A stretch of DNA of 64,000 nucleotides. Source: Octopus bimaculoides (Eukaryota). Shown here in pieces: positions 3,381 through 30,129 of this stretch (positions are counted from its first letter, which is position 1; every line of letters begins with the position of its first letter). The notes beneath the pieces were generated by a model that did not search any database, had not been told where the DNA came from, and worked only from the letters and a program-made list of their open reading frames with translations. The DNA lies in contig NC_068992.1 of assembly GCF_001194135.2 (NCBI RefSeq), positions 27,167,278-27,231,277 of the forward strand, read 5' to 3'. A program made the translations under genes and the position numbers.

Positions 3381-4621
3381 TTTCTTTATTAGCCACACAG
3401 GGCTCAACATAGAGGGGACAAAATACAAATGTAGAGTTTTTCTTTTCGAGGGGGGCGAAAACAAAGCAGAAAAAAAAACAAAAGTGGGGACAACGATGAA
3501 AAAAAATACAACGCAAAACGTTTGGGGTATTTACACAAAATACGAAATAATACAGAAAATTCCCAATAAATGGGGAGGTTATCCGTGGAAAGAAAAACCT
3601 ACGANNNNNNNNNNNNNNNNNNNNNNNNNNNNNNNNNNNNNNNNNNNNNNNNNNNNNNNNNNNNNNNNNNNNNNNNNNNNNNNNNNNNNNNNNNNNNNNN
3701 NNNNNNNNNNNNNNNNNNNNNNNNNNNNNNNNNNNNNNNNNNNNNNNNNNNNNNNNNNNNNNNNNNNNNNNNNNNNNNNNNNNNNNNNNNNNNNNNNNNN
3801 NNNNNNNNNNNNNNNNNNNNNNNNNNNNNNNNNNNNNNNNNNNNNNNNNNNNNNNNNNNNNNNNNNNNNNNNNNNNNNNNNNNNNNNNNNNNNNNNNNNN
3901 NNNNNNNNNNNNNNNNNNNNNNNNNNNNNNNNNNNNNNNNNNNNNNNNNNNNNNNNNNNNNNNNNNNNNNNNNNNNNNNNNNNNNNNNNNNNNNNNNNNN
4001 NNNNNNNNNNNNNNNNNNNNNNNNNNNNNNNNNNNNNNNNNNNNNNNNNNNNNNNNNNNNNNNNNNNNNNNNNNNNNNNNNNNNNNNNNNNNNNNNNNNN
4101 NNNNNNNNNNNNNNNNNNNNNNNNNNNNNNNNNNNNNNNNNNNNNNNNNNNNNNNNNNNNNNNNNNNNNNNNNNNNNNNNNNNNNNNNNNNNNNNNNNNN
4201 NNNNNNNNNNNNNNNNNNNNNNNNNNNNNNNNNNNNNNNNNNNNNNNNNNNNNNNNNNNNNNNNNNNNNNNNNNNNNNNNNNNNNNNNNNNNNNNNNNNN
4301 NNNNNNNNNNNNNNNNNNNNNNNNNNNNNNNNNNNNNNNNNNNNNNNNNNNNNNNNNNNNNNNNNNNNNNNNNNNNNNNNNNNNNNNNNNNNNNNNNNNN
4401 NNNNNNNNNNNNNNNNNNNNNNNNNNNNNNNNNNNNNNNNNNNNNNNNNNNNNNNNNNNNNNNNNNNNNNNNNNNNNNNNNNNNNNNNNNNNNNNNNNNN
4501 NNNNNNNNNNNNNNNNNNNNNNNGGTCATGGAGACGAGCTGCGGGAAAGCGCGTCGCACAAACGGCGACCACACCTGCTCACCGTCGTCTACGTAGAGCC
4601 GGAGATGTCGCAGTCTCAGCG

Positions 4622-4768: not shown

Positions 4769-6422
4769 CTTGTTAGTACATACAGATAAATATACATAAA
4801 TACAATTATTTATGTACGCTGACACATATAGAAGTGCTTTTAACACGTACGTTTATAATTGCATATATGTCACAAGGTTTTTTATTGTAGATCTATACCT
4901 TTACACATCTACATTTCTGCATATTTGCCTTTATTTTTGCATATTTGTTTATTAATTTGTTTGCCGTGTATCTGCCTGATTATTCATGTTACTGTATGAA
5001 TGTTTGCACTTGTCACTATCCTGCCAAGCGTAACTCATAAACATTTTAAACCTGTTTTTTTTTTTTTTCTCTTTTGTTTTTAGGTTGGCTTTTTTTTTTT
5101 TGCTTCTTTTGTACTTTTTTACTGGTTAAACATAATCCATCATTTGAAAAACAACTTCATGAAATTTTAGAAATTGATATAACAAAAATATATAAGCAAA
5201 CGATACCTCCATCCCTAACTCCACTCCACCTCCCCCACTGAATAATTCATGCAGCAAAATATTTATATGTTCGCACGCGCGCGCGCGCGCGTGTGTGAGT
5301 GTGAATGTGTGTGAATATGTGCGTATGTGTGTGTGCGCGTGCGTACATATGTATCCTACTCAGTACACATGGTGGCCTTCATTTTACGAAAAGGAAGAAA
5401 ATAACCAGCACATTTCGTTACATACAAACGTTATTATACGGTTTAAATTACAATTCCTTCAGTCCTAACACGTTTTACTTTACCGAGATCTACTCACAAT
5501 TCCCTGACAATGACAGAATACTCTGTCAAAAATTCAGAAGGCGTAAACTTAAATGACATGTAAGATTATTAATTCATTTATTTTTTATATTCATTTCTTT
5601 TTCATTTTCTCCGTTCTAGGATCATTATTGAATATTAAAGAACCAATATATGGAAGAAACGGAAGAAGTTTCTGCAGTGATTTAATTAGAAAAGGAAATG
5701 TAAATAAATAAAGATAGACAGAAATACATCTGCCTTCATATGTATGTACTGTTAAGTAGATTTAGTTGACATATCTCACTTACAAAAGTTTACTTTATGT
5801 TTTGGCGAATAGAGAAAAAAAAAACATGACGTCTAGATGTAGTCAAAGGAAAACAGCAGCGAAAGAATAACATATGCGAGGTGATAGAATGTAAGACAAA
5901 TGAATCCAAAGAGTCAGTCTTCGGTACGATGGTAGTAAATTTATTAAAAGGCTTCGGGTTTTCAGAATCTTTTGTGAGCGCAACCCCTTTCTCCAAACTA
6001 AACAGTAAAATCACCGATAATCTGTCAACTAAGGTTTTATTAGTCCCTCTATTGGAGATTATTTCATTATGAGCATAACATTAAACTGCATCTAGTAGGG
6101 AGGCTCCAATTAGGGAATGTGGATTCACCCTCTAATAACCATTAGTCCCAGGTCCGTTCTGATCTGGAACACTAATATCTGTCAGGATCCTAACTATGGG
6201 TTAAATATACTTCCCAGGCGTAGAGGAGACTCCTATTATTTCTGAAAAAAGCCGTGGGAAATTAAGCTCTTCTAAGAGAAATATACTCTGACATAAAACT
6301 TGCAATCAAAACAGTACCAGTCATTCAGTTCTATATTTAAGACATGAGGAATTATGTATATTATTTACATTATTTACATTACTTACGTTTAACGGATATT
6401 TGTCCTCATCTTGTTTGTTGTT

Positions 6423-6468
6423 AACACAACGTTTCGGCTGATATACCCCCCAGCCTTCATCAGGTGTC
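6423..6468 (-). ncRNA. Minimal type I hammerhead ribozyme, intact (copy A)
   Basis: Minus strand reads GACAC-CTGATGA-A-GGCTG-(GGGGGTATAT)-CAGCC-GAAA-CGTT-GTGTT. It has the core CUGAUGA/GAAA/UH, a 5 bp stem II, stem I GACAC:GUGUU and a palindromic ACGU stem III. Confidence 0.85.
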
Positions 6469-6515
6469 TTGGGGGAAATTTCGAACCTGGGTTCTCATTC
6501 CTAAGGTATTTTCGC

Positions 6516-6551
<36 letters not shown>

Positions 6552-6581
6552 TATTATTATTATCATTATTCAGGTCACTGC

Positions 6582-6645
6582 CTGGAATCGAAATCGGAAT
6601 CATAGGGTTAGTAGCCCGTGCTCTTAACCACTACGCCAAATGCCC
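6582..6645 (-). promoter_or_regulatory. tRNA-like Pol III internal promoter in the left arm
   Basis: A box TGGCGTAGTGG (reverse complement of 6628-6638); B box TTTCGATTCC with one mismatch (reverse complement of 6584-6593). Confidence 0.7.
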
Positions 6646-6651
6646 GTAGGC

Positions 6652-7206
6652 ACCGGATGCAGTGCCCGGCAATGGCTCTCATGGCTTCACATCTTAACTG
6701 ATTGGAAGTGTTATCATGTACATTGTTTTGTCTTGGTATAAAAAGATGGGCTACAGCAAATATTCTGCTCAATACCACAGATTTGCTTGTCAGTTGCTTG
6801 ACCTTAACCAGTTGAGCATGTCCCTTGGTGACTGATGATATGTGCATCTCTCATCAGGAGCAGGAGTAGTGGGAGAGCATCATAGCCATGTGCTGAGAGG
6901 AATTCTTTGGTGTTTGAATAATTCACCTTTGTAAACATGGGTGTTTTGCTCAACATTCTTAAACAGCCCTTTATTCAGGGACCTTTTGAGCGGGATGGGC
7001 TACTCGACCTGATGAAAATTCTAACTGGGCTCCACCTGCGAGGTCATGCGCTGTTTATCTTGATATGAGATCACCATGTCGTGCACATGTGGTTGTGATG
7101 CATGTGCCTGGTGTACCCTTATCAGACGGGTAGTCATGATGGGTGTACTGGGCTTCGTATATTTTTCCCCAGTGTCACTTTGATGGCATGCACTGCTCTC
7201 TCGCTC
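6652..7206 (+). mobile_element. Interspersed 555 bp non-coding repeat ending in (AAT)n; family unassigned
   Basis: A second copy lies in reverse orientation at 50679-51112. Both copies abut TAA-type microsatellites. Confidence 0.8.
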
Positions 7207-7238
<32 letters not shown>

Positions 7239-7329
7239 TAATAATAATAATAACAATATTAATAATAATAATAATGACAACATCGAAAAATACCTAAGGG
7301 ATGAGAACCCAGATTCGAAATTTCCCCAA

Positions 7330-7375
7330 GACACCTGATGAAGGCTGTGGGGTATATCAGCCGAAACGTTGTGTC
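7330..7375 (+). ncRNA. Minimal type I hammerhead ribozyme, intact (copy B)
   Basis: GACAC(7330-34)-CTGATGA(7335-41)-A-GGCTG-(TGGGGTATAT)-CAGCC-GAAA(7363-66)-CGTT-GTGTC(7371-75). Stems I and II are perfect; predicted cleavage is after 7370. Confidence 0.87.
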
Positions 7376-7939
7376 AACAACAAACAAGATGAGGACAAAT
7401 ATCCGTTAAATGTAAATAATCTAAATAATGTATATAAGAGTACCAGTCATCTTGCAATGCTTGTCACTGGATCCTACTATGACAACTGAGAGAGTGGCAA
7501 AAGTGTTGTGAAAGTTTTTGTCATTTAAATCCAATGGTGTACGGATGTCTCACTATCCATTTCATCCCTTGAAAATGTGTCAAGGCCAACAGGAAACGGT
7601 GTTTCCTAGGGCTAAATAGCAGTAGCATTTTTTCCCTTTCATGAGACTGTCACTTTAAGTTGACAACACACCATCACTTTATTGTGCTGCTACTGTTTAA
7701 ATCTCTCTGAGATATTTAGAAATGTATTATTTCTATCCCATGGTTTGTTTTGTATTTTATAAAGTTCTGTGGAAATTGATGCGTGGAGAGGCAGCGCCAC
7801 ATGATTGCCTTTGTCACTGACAAGCGAGAAAAGTTATATTTGCGCACATGCTAGGATGAAAATAAAACGGAACGATGGGATCTAATGGGAAACTGGTATC
7901 GTGTGACAAGATGAGGCAATCATATTCTCCGTTTTTTTT

Positions 7940-9180
7940 CTCTGTCCTTGTTTTCGTATACATTCGCTGCTTTCTTCCAAGGAATCTAATGCTCTTAGCT
8001 TGGTTTTTCCTGGCTAGATTGGAGCAATCTCGAGTATAACCAGCTGAAATTCTGGGCTAGTGGAGTACATTAACTGGTAATATGCTATACGATTTCACCA
8101 TTTGGTTCACAAATTCTGCACTTATAACTTTCTGTTGTGTTGTCTATTCTGCATTTGATTTAATTCGTTCTTAATGCTTGTCCTTGGGTAGCACAGATTA
8201 GAACCTCTGTTTCCGGTTTTAAATCACCTTTAGTCATCCATAGCCATCTGTTTTCTCTGCCTGTCTTATCTTCAACATCCCTATGAAATTGACCATTCTT
8301 TTTTCTTTATCCACTTCAAGTATTTGTACAGTGCTTTATCTTTACTTACAATCTTCCATCCTACACAAGCCTTACCTTCTTACTTCCAATAATAGTGGTT
8401 CTGTAGCATTTTTTACATACCATGCTATGTTGTTTTCTTCTGCTCTAATGCTGTATTCGCATCCAATCAGTCCTCTTCCCATCTTTTTCTTGCTACATAC
8501 AATCTGTCTGTGTCACTTTTTGGGTGGAGCATCCCATACCTAGTCAGCAAATTCCTTGTCTTTCTTTCTAAGCTATTTAGTTCGTCTGCTGTCCATGCGA
8601 TTGCCCTTGCTCCATATCTAAGGAGTGAAACCACTCAGGTGTTGATAGCCTCCATCTTATTCCGTCCGTTTAATTTCGACTTAAGTAGCTGTCTCAGTTT
8701 GCGCAAGTATTCCACTTTAAATTTTTCCGTCATTTCTTGTTCCATCAATTTATCCATTTATCCAATATCCCCAAGTACTTATAGCCCGCCTCTTCTATCT
8801 GCTTCATAACCTCTCCCAACGGTATCTCTTGTCCGTCCATATATTTAATTTTTGCCTCTCTTCAAGACTAACACTCCACACTTTTTCAGTCCGAACTCCA
8901 TTCTGATATCAGCACTGAAAGTATACACCGTATCAACGAGGGAACAGACTTGGGATTCATCTTTACCATAAGGTTTGAGGTCATCCTTGAATAACAAGTG
9001 GTTCACATTTTGTTGGCGACTTTTGAATACATACCTAGCTTTTGCTTTCCTCAGAATCAGTGTTAGTAGTATCATGCACAGTACAAAGATCAGTGGAGGA
9101 CGGCAATCCCCTTGGAAGATGCCTCTCCTGATCACTATTGTCCTTCTTCCATATGCTGTCAGTTCCGTCCTCCACTACCT
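7940..9180 (-). mobile_element. Decayed Dong/R4-clade non-LTR retrotransposon (RT plus CCHC finger)
   Basis: ORF 8845-9135 gives IRRGIFQGD...NHLLFKDDLK...MEFGLKKC. It is followed by YKYLGI, KSKLNGRN..EAINT, HPKSDTDRLY and CRICEP...HITS.C, all typical of R4/Dong ORFs. Stops and frameshifts are present. Confidence 0.8.
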
Positions 9181-9219
9181 TTTTCAAGCAATCGCTCAAC
9201 ATTCGATGCAATACCAAAT

Positions 9220-9700
9220 TGGAATCGAACTCGGAATCTTGGGGTTTGTAGCCCGCGCTCTTAACCACTACGCCATATGCCCGTGGGCAATTATGGAGTG
9301 AATTTTTAAGGCTTATAAATTTAATCCCTTTCTATCCTTCCTTATTACTGGTTCCCATATGCTATTAATATCTGCACTCGGTCTGCTTAGGAGGTCGTTG
9401 TGTCCTAGTATATGTGCTGCTGCTTTTAGTTTCGTATTTTCCAGTGGTGTTCTCTGTCTATTATTTTAACTTCATCACACAGAGGGAGGTGGTCTCCATT
9501 TTTCCATACATGATCAGCTATACCTGATTTATAAATATCTCCTCGTATCATAGCTTTGCGATGTTCGTTTACCCTTATTTTGAGGGGGTGACATGTTTCA
9601 CCTTTGTATAACCTACCACAGCTGCATAGGATGGAGTACACGCAGTCTTTGGTCATATTCACTTCTATTGGTGGTTTTACTCAAAGGAGATATTTGCGAA
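9220..9700 (-). mobile_element. Penelope-like element 3' fragment: GIY-YIG endonuclease followed by a tRNA-like segment
   Basis: ORF 9426-9662 reads CVYSILCSCGRLYKGET...R.NEH...KSGIADHVW...H...DEVKIIDREHHWKIR, a GIY-YIG EN of Penelope/Poseidon type. It is followed by a perfect A box (9265-9275) and B box (9221-9230). Confidence 0.85.
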
Positions 9701-9817
9701 GTTTCCCCAAGACACCTGAAGAAGGCCGGAGAGTATATCAACCGAAACGTTGTGTTAACAACAAGATGAGGACAAATATCTGTCGAATGTAAACAATATA
9801 AATAATGTAAATAATGT
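9697..9817 (+). mobile_element. Inverted short arm with degenerate hammerhead (copy C, 9711-9756)
   Basis: GACAC-CTGAAGA-A-GGCCG..CAACC-GAAACGTT-GTGTT. The core is intact but stem II has two mismatches; the AATGTAAAT tail follows. Confidence 0.75.
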
Positions 9818-29054: not shown

Positions 29055-30129
29055 GGCAGGAATGGCAACAAAAGAAAGAAAGAGATCTCGATATTATGCA
29101 AATAGAGGAATGTATCTGTAAAAATATGTGACACTTATTCAGTAGCCATGNNNNNNNNNNNNNNNNNNNNNNNNNNNNNNNNNNNNNNNNNNNNNNNNNN
29201 NNNNNNNNNNNNNNNNNNNNNNNNNNNNNNNNNNNNNNNNNNNNNNNNNNNNNNNNNNNNNNNNNNNNNNNNNNNNNNNNNNNNNNNNNNNNNNNNNNNN
29301 NNNNNNNNNNNNNNNNNNNNNNNNNNNNNNNNNNNNNNNNNNNNNNNNNNNNNNNNNNNNNNNNNNNNNNNNNNNNNNNNNNNNNNNNNNNNNNNNNNNN
29401 NNNNNNNNNNNNNNNNNNNNNNNNNNNNNNNNNNNNNNNNNNNNNNNNNNNNNNNNNNNNNNNNNNNNNNNNNNNNNNNNNNNNNNNNNNNNNNNNNNNN
29501 NNNNNNNNNNNNNNNNNNNNNNNNNNNNNNNNNNNNNNNNNNNNNNNNNNNNNNNNNNNNNNNNNNNNNNNNNNNNNNNNNNNNNNNNNNNNNNNNNNNN
29601 NNNNNNNNNNNNNNNNNNNNNNNNNNNNNNNNNNNNNNNNNATATATATATATATATGTACGTCAACCAATAAGTGAAAAGGTTAGTCCTTTAATTCAAA
29701 GGCAGAAATATAGGATGGGCTTCTACACAGTTTTTGTCTACCTGTACGATACGGTTTCACACATGTGATACAGGCATTTGAAAGAACTCCGATTACTGGA
29801 GATTATCATTGCAAATAGTTGAGGTGGAAATTCCTTCCAAACGAGTTTGAAATATGAAACACAGGCAAGAGAGATGACTCTAATAAACGAAATTTTCAGC
29901 AAAGGCGATGCAACTAAGGTGAATATTCTATCAATACAAATTCATTCACAAAACGCTGGTGTATCCAATGTTACGGTATTAGATACTTGCCTCATGTGCA
30001 ACGAAGTAGTATCGAACATGAAATTCTTTGATTCTCAACCAATATTGTTAACCTTATTGCCATGTACATACGGCTATTCAGATATAGAGTGATGCAAAAT
30101 ATAATACACGGACCGTAAAGGAAATCATT

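What the first reader, a model, noticed from the sequence alone, without database searches (positions are those of the whole stretch)
6423..7375. Intact minimal hammerhead ribozymes in a dispersed repeat family (six copies in 64 kb)
Seen: copies A (6423-6468, minus) and B (7330-7375, plus) read GACAC-CUGAUGA-A-GGCUG-loop-CAGCC-GAAA-CGUU-GUGU(C/U). This is the full catalytic core with stem I, stem II, an extra A after A9, and a stem III reduced to the palindrome ACGU, which cannot close as a monomer. Decayed copies lie at 9711, 12595, 12955 and 40223. Established: minimal type I hammerheads with a palindromic helix III occur in the terminal repeats of Penelope-like elements and are proposed to cleave as dimers; an extra A after A9 is tolerated in a viroid hammerhead. 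Inference: this is an abundant self-cleaving retroelement RNA in a cephalopod genome. I do not know whether this particular family has been described.
Basis: partly seen in the sequence, partly recalled or inferred. Interest (0 to 1): 0.85.

Follow-up and report, generated by a model that had tools for sequence, protein, structure and literature searches.

The report
Octopus Penelope-element minimal hammerhead ribozymes
The two intact hammerhead ribozyme motifs are real, but they are the ordinary "minimal" hammerheads that Penelope-like retrotransposons carry in their terminal repeats, here in an octopus family whose terminal repeat also holds a tRNA-derived segment.

Summary
Two intact minimal type I hammerheads lie at 7330-7375(+) and 6423-6468(-). 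Four decayed copies lie at the stated positions. Chance expectation for the pattern is about 0.01 hits.

Two copies (39814-40337+ and 9215-9707-) directly follow the C-terminal endonuclease reading frame of a Penelope-like element (PLE). An Octopus vulgaris locus and loci from a second assembly show the same order: RT, endonuclease, stop, tRNA-derived segment, spacer, hammerhead.

The copies also show known PLE insertion features. These are head-to-head inverted 5'-truncated pairs, a ~27-nt "tail" at one end only, and a 12-bp target-site duplication around the whole A-X-B unit.

Between the two species, BLAST aligns only the hammerhead and an adjacent AAGATGAGGACAA box of the HHR-bearing part of the terminal region. 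Helix II covaries (U-A/C-G, G-C/A-U).

Every ribozyme feature matches the PLE min-HHRs described by Cervera and de la Peña in 2014. So this is a new member of a known kind, not a new ribozyme.

Two things are less expected: a tRNA-Arg-like, A/B-box-bearing segment inside the terminal repeat, and hints of SINE-like derivatives. Cleavage itself is untested.

The parts
7330..7375 (+). Intact minimal type I hammerhead (copy B). Helix I GACAC/GUGUC, core CUGAUGA+A, helix II GGCUG/CAGCC, GAAA, palindrome ACGU, U17. Predicted cleavage after 7370.
   Evidence: 75.8 bits
6423..6468 (-). Intact minimal type I hammerhead (copy A). Helix I closes with G-U. Predicted cleavage after 6428 on the minus strand.
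   Evidence: 79.2 bits
6313..6324 (.). Left copy of the 12-bp target-site duplication AGTACCAGTCAT that flanks the whole A-X-B unit.
   Evidence: An exact 12-mer sits at both element ends. A match of >=12 nt occurred in 0.28% of random 61-nt segment pairs from this window.
7439..7450 (.). Right copy of the 12-bp target-site duplication.
6325..6351 (-). 'Tail' of copy A (sense TTCCTCATGTCTTAAATATAGAACTGA). It is absent from partner copy B.
   Evidence: alignment. The tail is present in A, C, E and two O. vulgaris copies, and absent in B, D, F and one O. vulgaris copy.
6352..6512 (-). HHR-bearing body of copy A. It includes the invariant AAGATGAGGACAAATATC box and the GTAAATAAT 9-mer repeats.
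6513..6572 (-). Internal (AAT)n microsatellite of copy A.
6573..6652 (-). tRNA-derived segment of copy A, with A-box-like TGGCGTAGTGG and B-box-like GATTTCGATTCC. Copy A's 5' end falls a few nt upstream of tRNA position +1.
   Evidence: ARAGORN and Rfam do not call it a tRNA.
6656..7206 (+). Unrelated ~550-nt repeat X, enclosed between A and B and inside the target-site duplication. A second X copy lies at 51103-50673(-). X ends in its own trinucleotide microsatellite.
   Evidence: No PLE protein similarity.
7207..7438 (+). Copy B: (AAT)n at 7207-7276, then the HHR body, ending without a tail.
9313..9707 (-). 5'-truncated C-terminal endonuclease reading frame of a PLE (..CVYSILCSCGRLYKGETCHPLKIRVNEHRKA..KGLNL*). 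It carries one frameshift and one in-frame stop.
9215..9290 (-). tRNA-derived segment immediately after that reading frame. This copy stops after GCATCGAA and lacks (AAT)n and the HHR body.
9697..9817 (+). Copy D: a 5'-truncated body joined head-to-head to the 9.3-kb PLE fragment, through ~8 nt of microhomology (CGAAGTTT). Its HHR at 9706-9762 has a broken helix II.
12544..12778 (-). Copy F: the last ~23 nt of the tRNA-derived segment, (AAT)n, then a body with the HHR 3' half deleted and no tail.
12780..13100 (+). Copy C: head-to-head with F at a palindromic junction. It has the last ~18 nt of the tRNA-derived segment, a long (AAT)n, and a body with tail. Its HHR at 12950-13006 carries C3->U.
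39814..40337 (+). Copy E, a 5'-truncated PLE 3' end: endonuclease reading-frame end (39814-40013), tRNA-derived segment (~40045-40121), (AAT)n, and a body with tail. The HHR remnant is at 40213-40269.

Best explanation
The motif is the minimal, helix-III-less type I hammerhead ribozyme found in the terminal (pseudo-LTR) region of an octopus Penelope-like retrotransposon.

The element's 3' region reads: RT, GIY-YIG-type endonuclease reading frame, stop, tRNA-Arg-like segment, (AAT)n, ~190-nt body with the hammerhead, and an optional ~27-nt tail.

The six window copies are dead, 5'-truncated insertions. Two of them are young enough to keep the ribozyme intact.

Shown here:
- the motif;
- its position in the element;
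- the PLE-type insertion architecture;
- preferential cross-species conservation, and covariation of helix II.

Inferred from published PLE and hammerhead work:
- In a transcript or complex holding two sense copies, the ACGU palindromes and the swapped helix I strands pair to form a double hammerhead.
- Each RNA is cut after GUU, leaving a 5'-OH and a 2',3'-cyclic phosphate. This trims the element RNA out of longer co-transcripts and perhaps allows circularisation.
- A lone copy, or an inverted pair such as A/B, should not cleave.
For: Motif:
- Exact core, both helices, G10.1-C11.1, A15.1/U16.1, H17=U.

PLE context in the window:
- Endonuclease reading-frame ends lie directly upstream of the tRNA-derived segment at 9313-9707(-) and 39814-40013(+).

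Same order elsewhere:
- O. vulgaris L001: reading frame 6001-6363, tRNA-derived 6410-6469, HHR body 6500-6648.
- ERZ21867824 loci L002 and L037.
- RVT_1 upstream on the same strand: 30.2 bits in L002, E 7.8e-6 in L037.
- More than 300 RT homologues in that assembly.

Endonuclease identity:
- One homologue is named 'predicted GIY-YIG superfamily endonuclease' by JGI.
- The AlphaFold core (pLDDT 72-86) has I-TevI as its best Foldseek match, probability 0.82.

PLE insertion hallmarks (PMC8557442, PMC11167929):
- Head-to-head inverted 5'-truncated partners: A/B, F/C and 9.3k/D in the window, and also in L001, L037 and L041.
- A tail at one end only.
- A 12-bp target-site duplication.

Constraint:
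- Between octopus and the second species, BLAST aligns only the HHR plus ~25 nt downstream of the HHR-bearing part of the terminal region.
- 85.7% of helix cells pair, against <=49% when partners are slid.
- Pair 10.4-11.4 is C-G (5), U-A (5), U-G (2). Pair 10.5-11.5 is G-C (6), A-U (2), G-U (2).
- The 15.2/16.2 palindrome is kept as C-G (8) or U-G (4).

All motif peculiarities are those listed for PLE min-HHRs (PMC4209133).
Against: - No cleavage data exist. Published PLE min-HHRs cleave poorly in vitro, even as dimers (PMC4209133; PMC6765202).
- No direct-tandem (pLTR-ORF-pLTR) copy was seen in any of the loci examined, so the cis-dimer substrate is not documented for this family.
- All insertions extend 75-105 nt past the predicted cleavage site. 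The reverse-transcribed template was therefore uncut or religated at that hammerhead.
- Within octopus, genomic copies do not keep the HHR better than the flanks. The most conserved block is AAGATGAGGACAAATATC, not the core.
- Pfam does not recognise the endonuclease, and the structural match is weak (E 0.18).
- The covariation set is small (13 sequences) and its members are related.
- ViennaRNA favours the dimer only slightly (-34.8 against 2 x -15.0 kcal/mol) and predicts a competing pairing of the core.
Confidence: 0.85

Rival explanations
1. The unit is mainly a pol III-driven SINE: a tRNA-Arg-derived head, (AAT)n and a PLE-derived 3' body. This would make it an octopus counterpart of the schistosome Sm-alpha/Sj-alpha hammerhead SINEs. 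It would be mobilised in trans by the PLE, with the hammerhead inherited from the PLE terminal repeat.
For: - The segment keeps A-box-like and B-box-like sequences. It aligns to a tRNA-Arg(ACG) sequence written from memory with scores of 38-46, against a shuffle maximum of 29-33.
- Copy A, and both members of an O. vulgaris pair (L001 ~8062-8079 and 8075 onward), have 5' ends within a few nt of tRNA position +1. That is about 3 of 11 copies, which is unexpected for random 5' truncation of a ~3-kb element.
- 11.6% of the O. vulgaris genome is SINE, mostly unclassified (PMC13282606).
Against: - The same segment sits inside bona fide PLE 3' ends, directly after the reading frame, in two species. 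It is therefore part of the autonomous element.
- ARAGORN and Rfam do not recognise it as a tRNA.
- Only three 5' ends support the idea, and no transcript data are available.
- This rival complements the main explanation rather than excluding it.
Confidence: 0.35
2. The conserved block is a protein-binding or reverse-transcription-initiation signal of the PLE RNA. It only resembles a hammerhead, and no cleavage occurs in vivo.
For: - The most invariant stretch is the AAGATGAGGACAA box just 3' of the motif.
- Insertions always run through the predicted cleavage site.
- PLE reverse transcription starts at internal RNA sites (PMC11167929).
- Published min-HHR activity is very low (PMC4209133).
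Against: - All of the core nucleotides required for catalysis are present in the intact copies, and almost all are retained across two species and several sub-families, while the helix II sequence changes in a compensatory way.
- A binding site would not need the CUGANGA/GAAA/UH arrangement.
- PLEs of plants, fungi and protists carry fully active canonical hammerheads at the same position (PMC4209133).
Confidence: 0.1
3. The copies are non-LTR 'retrozymes': tandem arrays of short hammerhead-bearing units that propagate as small circular RNAs.
For: Type I hammerheads with a palindromic helix III are the retrozyme hallmark in animals (PMC7229834). Retrozymes are now argued to derive from PLE pLTRs (bioRxiv 10.64898/2026.07.22.740005).
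Against: No head-to-tail array exists here. The six copies are dispersed or in inverted pairs. Two are physically continuous with a PLE reading frame.
Confidence: 0.05

Closest known systems
Minimal hammerheads (min-HHRs) of metazoan Penelope-like elements (Cervera and de la Peña 2014, PMC4209133; Lünse, Weinberg and Breaker 2016, cited via PMC6765202)
   Same: - Type I topology, helix I of 4-5 bp, G10.1-C11.1.
- One unpaired nucleotide between A9 and 10.1.
- No helix III hairpin, but a palindromic 15.2/16.2 (ACGU).
- Location in the PLE terminal repeat.
- Mostly solitary, truncated copies.
- Frequent pairs 100-700 bp apart on opposite strands.
   Different: - Helix II is 5-6 bp here, against the 7-8 bp reported for schistosome families.
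- The host lineage (octopus) is not named in the papers I could read.
- The terminal repeat also contains a tRNA-derived segment and an internal (AAT)n.
Sm-alpha / Sj-alpha SINE-like hammerhead elements of Schistosoma (Ferbeyre 1998 and Laha 2000, cited via PMC6765202)
   Same: A tRNA-type pol III promoter region lies upstream of a hammerhead in a short, abundant retroposon.
   Different: The schistosome elements carry canonical hammerheads with a real helix III, and are active in vitro. Here the hammerhead is the minimal kind, and the tRNA-like segment is also part of the autonomous PLE.
Animal non-LTR retrozymes (Cervera and de la Peña 2020, PMC7229834)
   Same: Type I hammerhead with a weak, palindromic helix III that needs a second copy. 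Proposed PLE ancestry.
   Different: Retrozymes are tandem arrays that give small circRNAs. These copies are dispersed or inverted, and are joined to PLE coding sequence.
Poseidon PLE of Anolis carolinensis (PAc), studied in vitro (Frangieh 2024, PMC11167929)
   Same: HHR in the pLTR. The endonuclease prefers ATT-rich DNA. Reverse transcription starts at two adjacent internal sites, which explains a genomic 'tail'. Here there are two discrete 3' termini about 27-30 nt apart, and (AAT)n lies at the junctions.
   Different: No biochemistry exists for the octopus element. I did not determine its PLE clade.

Membership tests
Hammerhead ribozyme, type I minimal (PLE min-HHR) | Catalytic core C3 U4 G5 A6 N7 G8 A9 ... 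G12 A13 A14, A15.1/U16.1, H17 not G | tested here: met
   A and B carry every core position, with H17=U. C, D, E and F each have disabling changes.
Hammerhead ribozyme, type I minimal (PLE min-HHR) | Helices I and II flank the core, with G10.1-C11.1, and are supported by covariation | tested here: met
   85.7% of cells pair, against <=49% for slid partners. There are double changes in 4 pairs. 10.1-11.1 is G-C in 9 sequences and G-U in 3 of 13. The sample is small.
Hammerhead ribozyme, type I minimal (PLE min-HHR) | No helix III hairpin; palindromic 15.2/16.2, so that two copies can pair | tested here: met
   ACGU in octopus; AUGU (still self-pairing through G-U) or ACGU in the second species.
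Hammerhead ribozyme, type I minimal (PLE min-HHR) | One unpaired nucleotide between A9 and 10.1 | tested here: met
   All 13 aligned copies have it: A in 12, U in 1.
Hammerhead ribozyme (Rfam models RF00163, RF00008 and relatives) | Match to a curated covariance model | tested here: not met
   No hammerhead hit at the gathering threshold in the whole window, nor at E<=10 in 6200-7600. The Rfam models require a helix III hairpin.
Hammerhead ribozyme | Site-specific self-cleavage | not testable with these tools
   Needs in vitro transcription or RNA end mapping.
Penelope-like element (EN+) | Reverse transcriptase reading frame | tested here: met
   Not present in the window itself. It is present upstream of the same endonuclease and terminal region in L002 (RVT_1, 30.2 bits) and L037 (E 7.8e-6).
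Penelope-like element (EN+) | C-terminal GIY-YIG endonuclease | tested here: inconclusive
   Pfam and PDB sequence searches were negative. The best fold match is I-TevI at probability 0.82, E 0.18. JGI names one homologue a GIY-YIG endonuclease. The motif VYSIxCSCGxxYKGET..R..EH reads as GIY-YIG with the PLE-type cysteines (my knowledge).
Penelope-like element (EN+) | Pseudo-LTRs from partial tandem copies | tested here: not met
   No same-strand pair flanks a reading frame in the window or in L001, L002, L037-L042. All copies with a reading frame are 5'-truncated, so this is a sampling limit rather than evidence of absence.
Penelope-like element (EN+) | Inverted 5'-truncated copy abutting the insertion, and a 30-40-bp tail at one end | tested here: met
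   Pairs A/B, F/C and 9.3k/D in the window, plus L001, L037 and L041. In A/B, C/F and the O. vulgaris pair, one member has the ~27-nt tail and the other lacks it.
Animal non-LTR retrozyme | Head-to-tail tandem array of short HHR units | tested here: not met
   The copies are dispersed or inverted.
tRNA-derived SINE | tRNA-related 5' head with pol III boxes, at the 5' end of independent copies | tested here: inconclusive
   The head is tRNA-Arg-like by alignment to a sequence recalled from memory, but ARAGORN and Rfam do not call it. Three copies start near +1; the others are continuous with the PLE reading frame.

The most novel reading that the evidence does not exclude
This PLE lineage has built a tRNA-Arg-derived pol III promoter module into its terminal repeat, between the endonuclease stop codon and the hammerhead.

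The module is conserved in position in two cephalopod species. It could spawn short pol III-transcribed derivatives (tRNA head, (AAT)n, hammerhead body) that make up part of the very large 'unclassified SINE' fraction of octopus genomes.

That would be a second, independent origin of hammerhead-bearing SINEs after the schistosome Sm-alpha elements. It would also link SINE amplification in octopus to PLE machinery rather than LINE machinery.
Probability: 0.3. Interest if true: 0.55.

Novelty: new member of a known kind. Interest (0 to 1): 0.3.

Why it matters
On its own, this adds one more animal lineage to the long list of genomes whose Penelope-like elements carry minimal hammerheads.

Its practical value is for annotation:
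- These motifs are invisible to Rfam.
- The inverted pairs with microsatellites are likely to break short-read assemblies. This window has nine N gaps.
- A sizeable share of octopus 'SINE/unknown' repeats may really be PLE terminal regions.

If the tRNA-derived module proves to be a working pol III promoter, the family would be a useful system. It could show how PLEs generate non-autonomous offspring, and whether the hammerhead is needed for their mobilisation.

Tried and rejected
- **Rfam scans.** The whole window at gathering threshold, and two sub-regions at E<=10, gave no hammerhead and no tRNA family.
- **Public collection scans.** I scanned JGI metagenomes and IMG/VR for the invariant 18-mer AAGATGAGGACAAATATC. 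There were 27 and 7 hits, all chance matches with no surrounding homology.
- **Microsatellite-targeting idea.** I considered that the HHR body is a separate element that targets the (AAT)n tails of a tRNA SINE. I did not adopt it. The order reading frame, tRNA-like segment, spacer, HHR recurs in a second species that has no (AAT)n at all. The idea is not fully excluded: two copies end right after (AAT)n/ACAT without a body.
- **Known octopus SINEs.** I considered that the unit is OR1, OR2 or OK. The literature files OR1/OR2 under CORE-SINEs, and Ceph-SINEs are reported only from squid and cuttlefish. I could not see those sequences, so this stays open.
- **Repeat X as PLE coding sequence.** tblastn with PLE proteins gave no match.
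- **Target-site duplications for other copies.** None was convincing for F/C, 9.3k/D or E.
- **RNAcofold.** The dimer is only ~5 kcal/mol better than two monomers, and the predicted pairing is a full domain swap. This is not informative about the tertiary fold.
- **Endonuclease identity by sequence.** Pfam and PDB sequence searches, single-sequence and profile, were negative.
- **Papers not held.** Lünse et al. 2016 and Albertin et al. 2015 are not in the library.
Full report
**1. The observation**

Reading 6300-7500 confirms the two motifs letter for letter. Copy B at 7330-7375(+) is GACAC-CUGAUGA-A-GGCUG-UGGGGUAUAU-CAGCC-GAAA-CGUU-GUGUC. Copy A at 6423-6468(-) differs only in the loop and in a terminal U.

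All hammerhead core positions are present: C3-A9, G12-A14, A15.1/U16.1, H17=U. Helix I has 5 bp and helix II has 5-6 bp, starting with G10.1-C11.1. One extra A follows A9. Helix III is reduced to the self-complementary ACGU.

The core-plus-GAAACGTT pattern occurs twice, against 0.01 expected. A stricter structural descriptor of my own finds exactly these two sites, and none in 100 shuffles.

BLAST, MAFFT and a covariance model find the same six family members and no more. The four others, at 9711, 12595, 12955 and 40223, are disabled:
- D by helix II mismatches;
- C by C3->U;
- E and F by deletions.

No Rfam hammerhead model matches. That is expected, because those models need a helix III hairpin.

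**2. What the repeat unit is**

Aligned in the ribozyme's sense, the unit reads as follows:
- a ~75-nt tRNA-related segment (GGGCAT.TGGCGTAGTGGTTAAGAGC...GATTTCGATTCCAGGCAGTGACC);
- TGA(ATA)n;
- a ~190-nt body that starts ACATCGAAAAATACC;
- the hammerhead about 60 nt into the body;
- an invariant AAGATGAGGACAAATATC box, and one to three GTAAATAAT repeats;
- in about half of the copies, a further ~27 nt (TTCCTCATGTCTTAAATATAGAACTG).

The decisive context lies upstream. In copy E (39814-40013+) and at 9313-9707(-), the tRNA-related segment is preceded, about 15 nt after a stop codon, by a reading frame. It reads ...CVYSILCSCGRLYKGETCHPLKIRVNEHRKA...IADHVWKNGDHLPLWDEVKIIDREHHWKIRKLKEAAH...LSRPSADINSIWEPVIRKDRKGLNL*.

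A protein search gave 41 relatives:
- one from Octopus vulgaris chromosome OX597819.1 (85% identity);
- one named by JGI as a GIY-YIG superfamily endonuclease;
- most of the rest from one ENA assembly, ERZ21867824.

**3. Related loci**

In O. vulgaris (L001) the order is the same: reading-frame end at 6001-6363, tRNA-related segment at 6410-6469, a short (AAT)n, then the HHR body at 6500-6648. A further intact hammerhead lies at 7878-7925(-).

In the second assembly the endonuclease proteins are ~65-70% identical to the octopus fragment. The order is again reading frame, stop, tRNA-like segment, spacer (no AAT repeat), hammerhead (L002, L037).

On the same strand, just upstream, lie RT fragments. 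They score RVT_1 at 30.2 bits in L002 and E 7.8e-6 in L037. The RT has more than 300 relatives in that assembly.

The endonuclease is not recognised by Pfam or by PDB sequence searches. An AlphaFold model has a confident beta-beta-alpha-alpha-beta-alpha core (pLDDT 72-86). Its best Foldseek match is the I-TevI GIY-YIG catalytic domain, with probability 0.82 and E 0.18. That is weak, but it points the right way.

RT plus a C-terminal GIY-YIG-type nuclease plus a hammerhead in the terminal region is the definition of an EN+ Penelope-like element (PMC4209133, PMC8557442).

**4. Insertion architecture**

The window holds three head-to-head inverted pairs: A/B, F/C (palindromic junction at ~12778) and the 9.3-kb PLE fragment/D. 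The junction of the last pair shares ~8 nt of microhomology. The same arrangement recurs in L001, L037 and L041.

In the three pairs where both ends can be read, one member carries the ~27-nt tail and the other stops about 27-30 nt earlier.

The whole A-X-B unit (6325-7438) is bracketed by an exact 12-bp direct repeat, AGTACCAGTCAT, at 6313-6324 and 7439-7450. Matches this long occur in 0.28% of random segment pairs from this window.

These features match published descriptions:
- "An inverted 5'-truncated copy... adjacent" and "a 30- to 40-bp extension (tail)... only at one end" are the published hallmarks of PLE insertions (PMC8557442).
- The two discrete 3' termini fit the two adjacent internal initiation sites of PLE reverse transcription (PMC11167929).
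- The (AAT)n at the junctions fits the ATT preference of the PLE endonuclease (PMC11167929).

Cervera and de la Peña also reported [quoted passage not shown] (PMC4209133).

**5. Is the ribozyme under constraint?**

Within octopus, the copies decay like neutral DNA. The hammerhead is no better kept than its flanks, and the best-kept block is the AAGATGAGGACAA box.

Between species the picture differs. Of the HHR-bearing part of the terminal region, BLAST aligns only the hammerhead plus ~25 nt downstream.

On 13 hammerheads from both species (alignment A2), 85.7% of helix cells form pairs, against 19-49% when partners are slid by 1-3 columns. Specific pairs behave as follows:
- Pair 10.4-11.4 is C-G in 5, U-A in 5 and U-G in 2.
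- Pair 10.5-11.5 is G-C in 6, A-U in 2 and G-U in 2.
- The inner palindrome pair is C-G in 8 and U-G in 4.
- The extra nucleotide after A9 is present in all 13.

One sub-family (L037 10897-10941) has helix II GGCCA/UGGCC instead of GGCUG/CAGCC, a doubly compensated change.

The set is small and its members are related, so this is support, not proof.

**6. Mechanism**

Shown: sequence, position, architecture and conservation.

Inferred from established hammerhead and PLE work (Forster 1988 via PMC6765202; PMC4209133):
- A single copy cannot close helix III.
- Two sense copies can pair ACGU with ACGU and swap their helix I strands, giving about 14 intermolecular base pairs and a double hammerhead.
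- Each RNA is then cut after GUU.

In an active pLTR-ORF-pLTR element, this would trim unit-length RNA from longer transcripts.

Against a simple version of this:
- No same-strand tandem was found in any locus.
- Every insertion runs 75-105 nt past the cleavage site, so the copied template was uncut or religated.
- Published min-HHRs are slow in vitro.
- Thermodynamic folding is uninformative.
- An inverted pair such as A/B would instead fold into a ~120-bp hairpin in any read-through transcript.

**7. Comparison with what is known, and novelty**

That includes the extra A, the short helix I and the palindromic helix III.

I found no paper in the library that reports hammerheads in octopus. 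A 2026 O. vulgaris repeat annotation lists 31 recently active PLE families and 11.6% SINEs, but does not mention ribozymes. So this is a new member of a known kind.

The one feature I did not find described is the tRNA-derived segment inside the terminal repeat:
- It resembles tRNA-Arg(ACG), which I wrote from memory. Alignment scores are 38-46, against a shuffle maximum of 29-33.
- It keeps A-box-like and B-box-like sequences.
- It is not called by ARAGORN or Rfam.
- Three of about eleven octopus copies begin within a few nucleotides of its +1.

This hints at pol III-driven, SINE-like derivatives comparable to schistosome Sm-alpha. It is a lead only.

**8. Verdict**

The feature is real, but of a well-described kind, so interest is modest.

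Noticed in passing
window 6656-7206(+) and 51103-50673(-): An unrelated ~430-550-nt repeat (X) sits between the inverted copies A and B, inside their shared 12-bp target-site duplication. It ends in its own trinucleotide microsatellite and has no PLE protein similarity. One possibility is a chimeric retrocopy made by template switching at (AAU)n. Another is a later insertion.
   Followed up: partly
window 7384-7401, 6397-6414 and the equivalent position in all copies; L002 6974-6986: The box AAGATGAGGACAA(ATATC), about 13 nt 3' of the hammerhead's helix I (about 18 nt past the cleavage site), is invariant in all six window copies. It is the best-conserved part of the terminal region across the two species, better kept than the ribozyme core in the decayed copies. 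Its function is unknown; it could be an RT-binding or initiation signal.
   Followed up: partly
window 9200-9225(-); L001 8075-8300(+): Two copies end right after the tRNA-like segment/(AAT)n, at ACAT(CGAA), with no hammerhead body. This suggests a third class of 3' end, or that the unit boundary lies at the (AAT)n/ACATCGAA junction.
   Followed up: no
window 9697-9707: The head-to-head junction between the PLE reading-frame fragment (-) and copy D (+) shares ~8 nt (CGAAGTTT) that fit both partners. This microhomology is consistent with template switching.
   Followed up: partly
L038 9324-9375(-); L039 3736-3785(+) and 3186-3235(-); L037 2697-2745(+): The second species holds further, different minimal-hammerhead families. 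One has an extra U after A9 and the helix III palindrome GUAC. Another has helix II GGUUC/GAACC. One of these families again occurs as an opposite-strand pair ~500 nt apart.
   Followed up: no
window 3605-4523, 17172-17195, 29151-29641, 39174-39284, 45461-46151, 47521-47970, 52370-52553, 59320-59390, 61982-62183: There are nine runs of N (3143 bases in all). The window comes from a gapped scaffold, and G+C is 34%. Inverted PLE pairs and long (AAT)n tracts are the kind of structure that breaks short-read assemblies.
   Followed up: no
window 50400-50700(-): Downstream of the second X copy lies a long compound trinucleotide tract: (AAC)(AGC)n(ACC)n(AAC)n(ACT)n(GCT)n, then GAT/GAC-rich repeats.
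   Followed up: no
L001 1-4237: The O. vulgaris locus that carries the related PLE copies lies next to a gene with a pyridoxal-dependent decarboxylase domain (PF00282). The elements sit close to ordinary genes.
   Followed up: no
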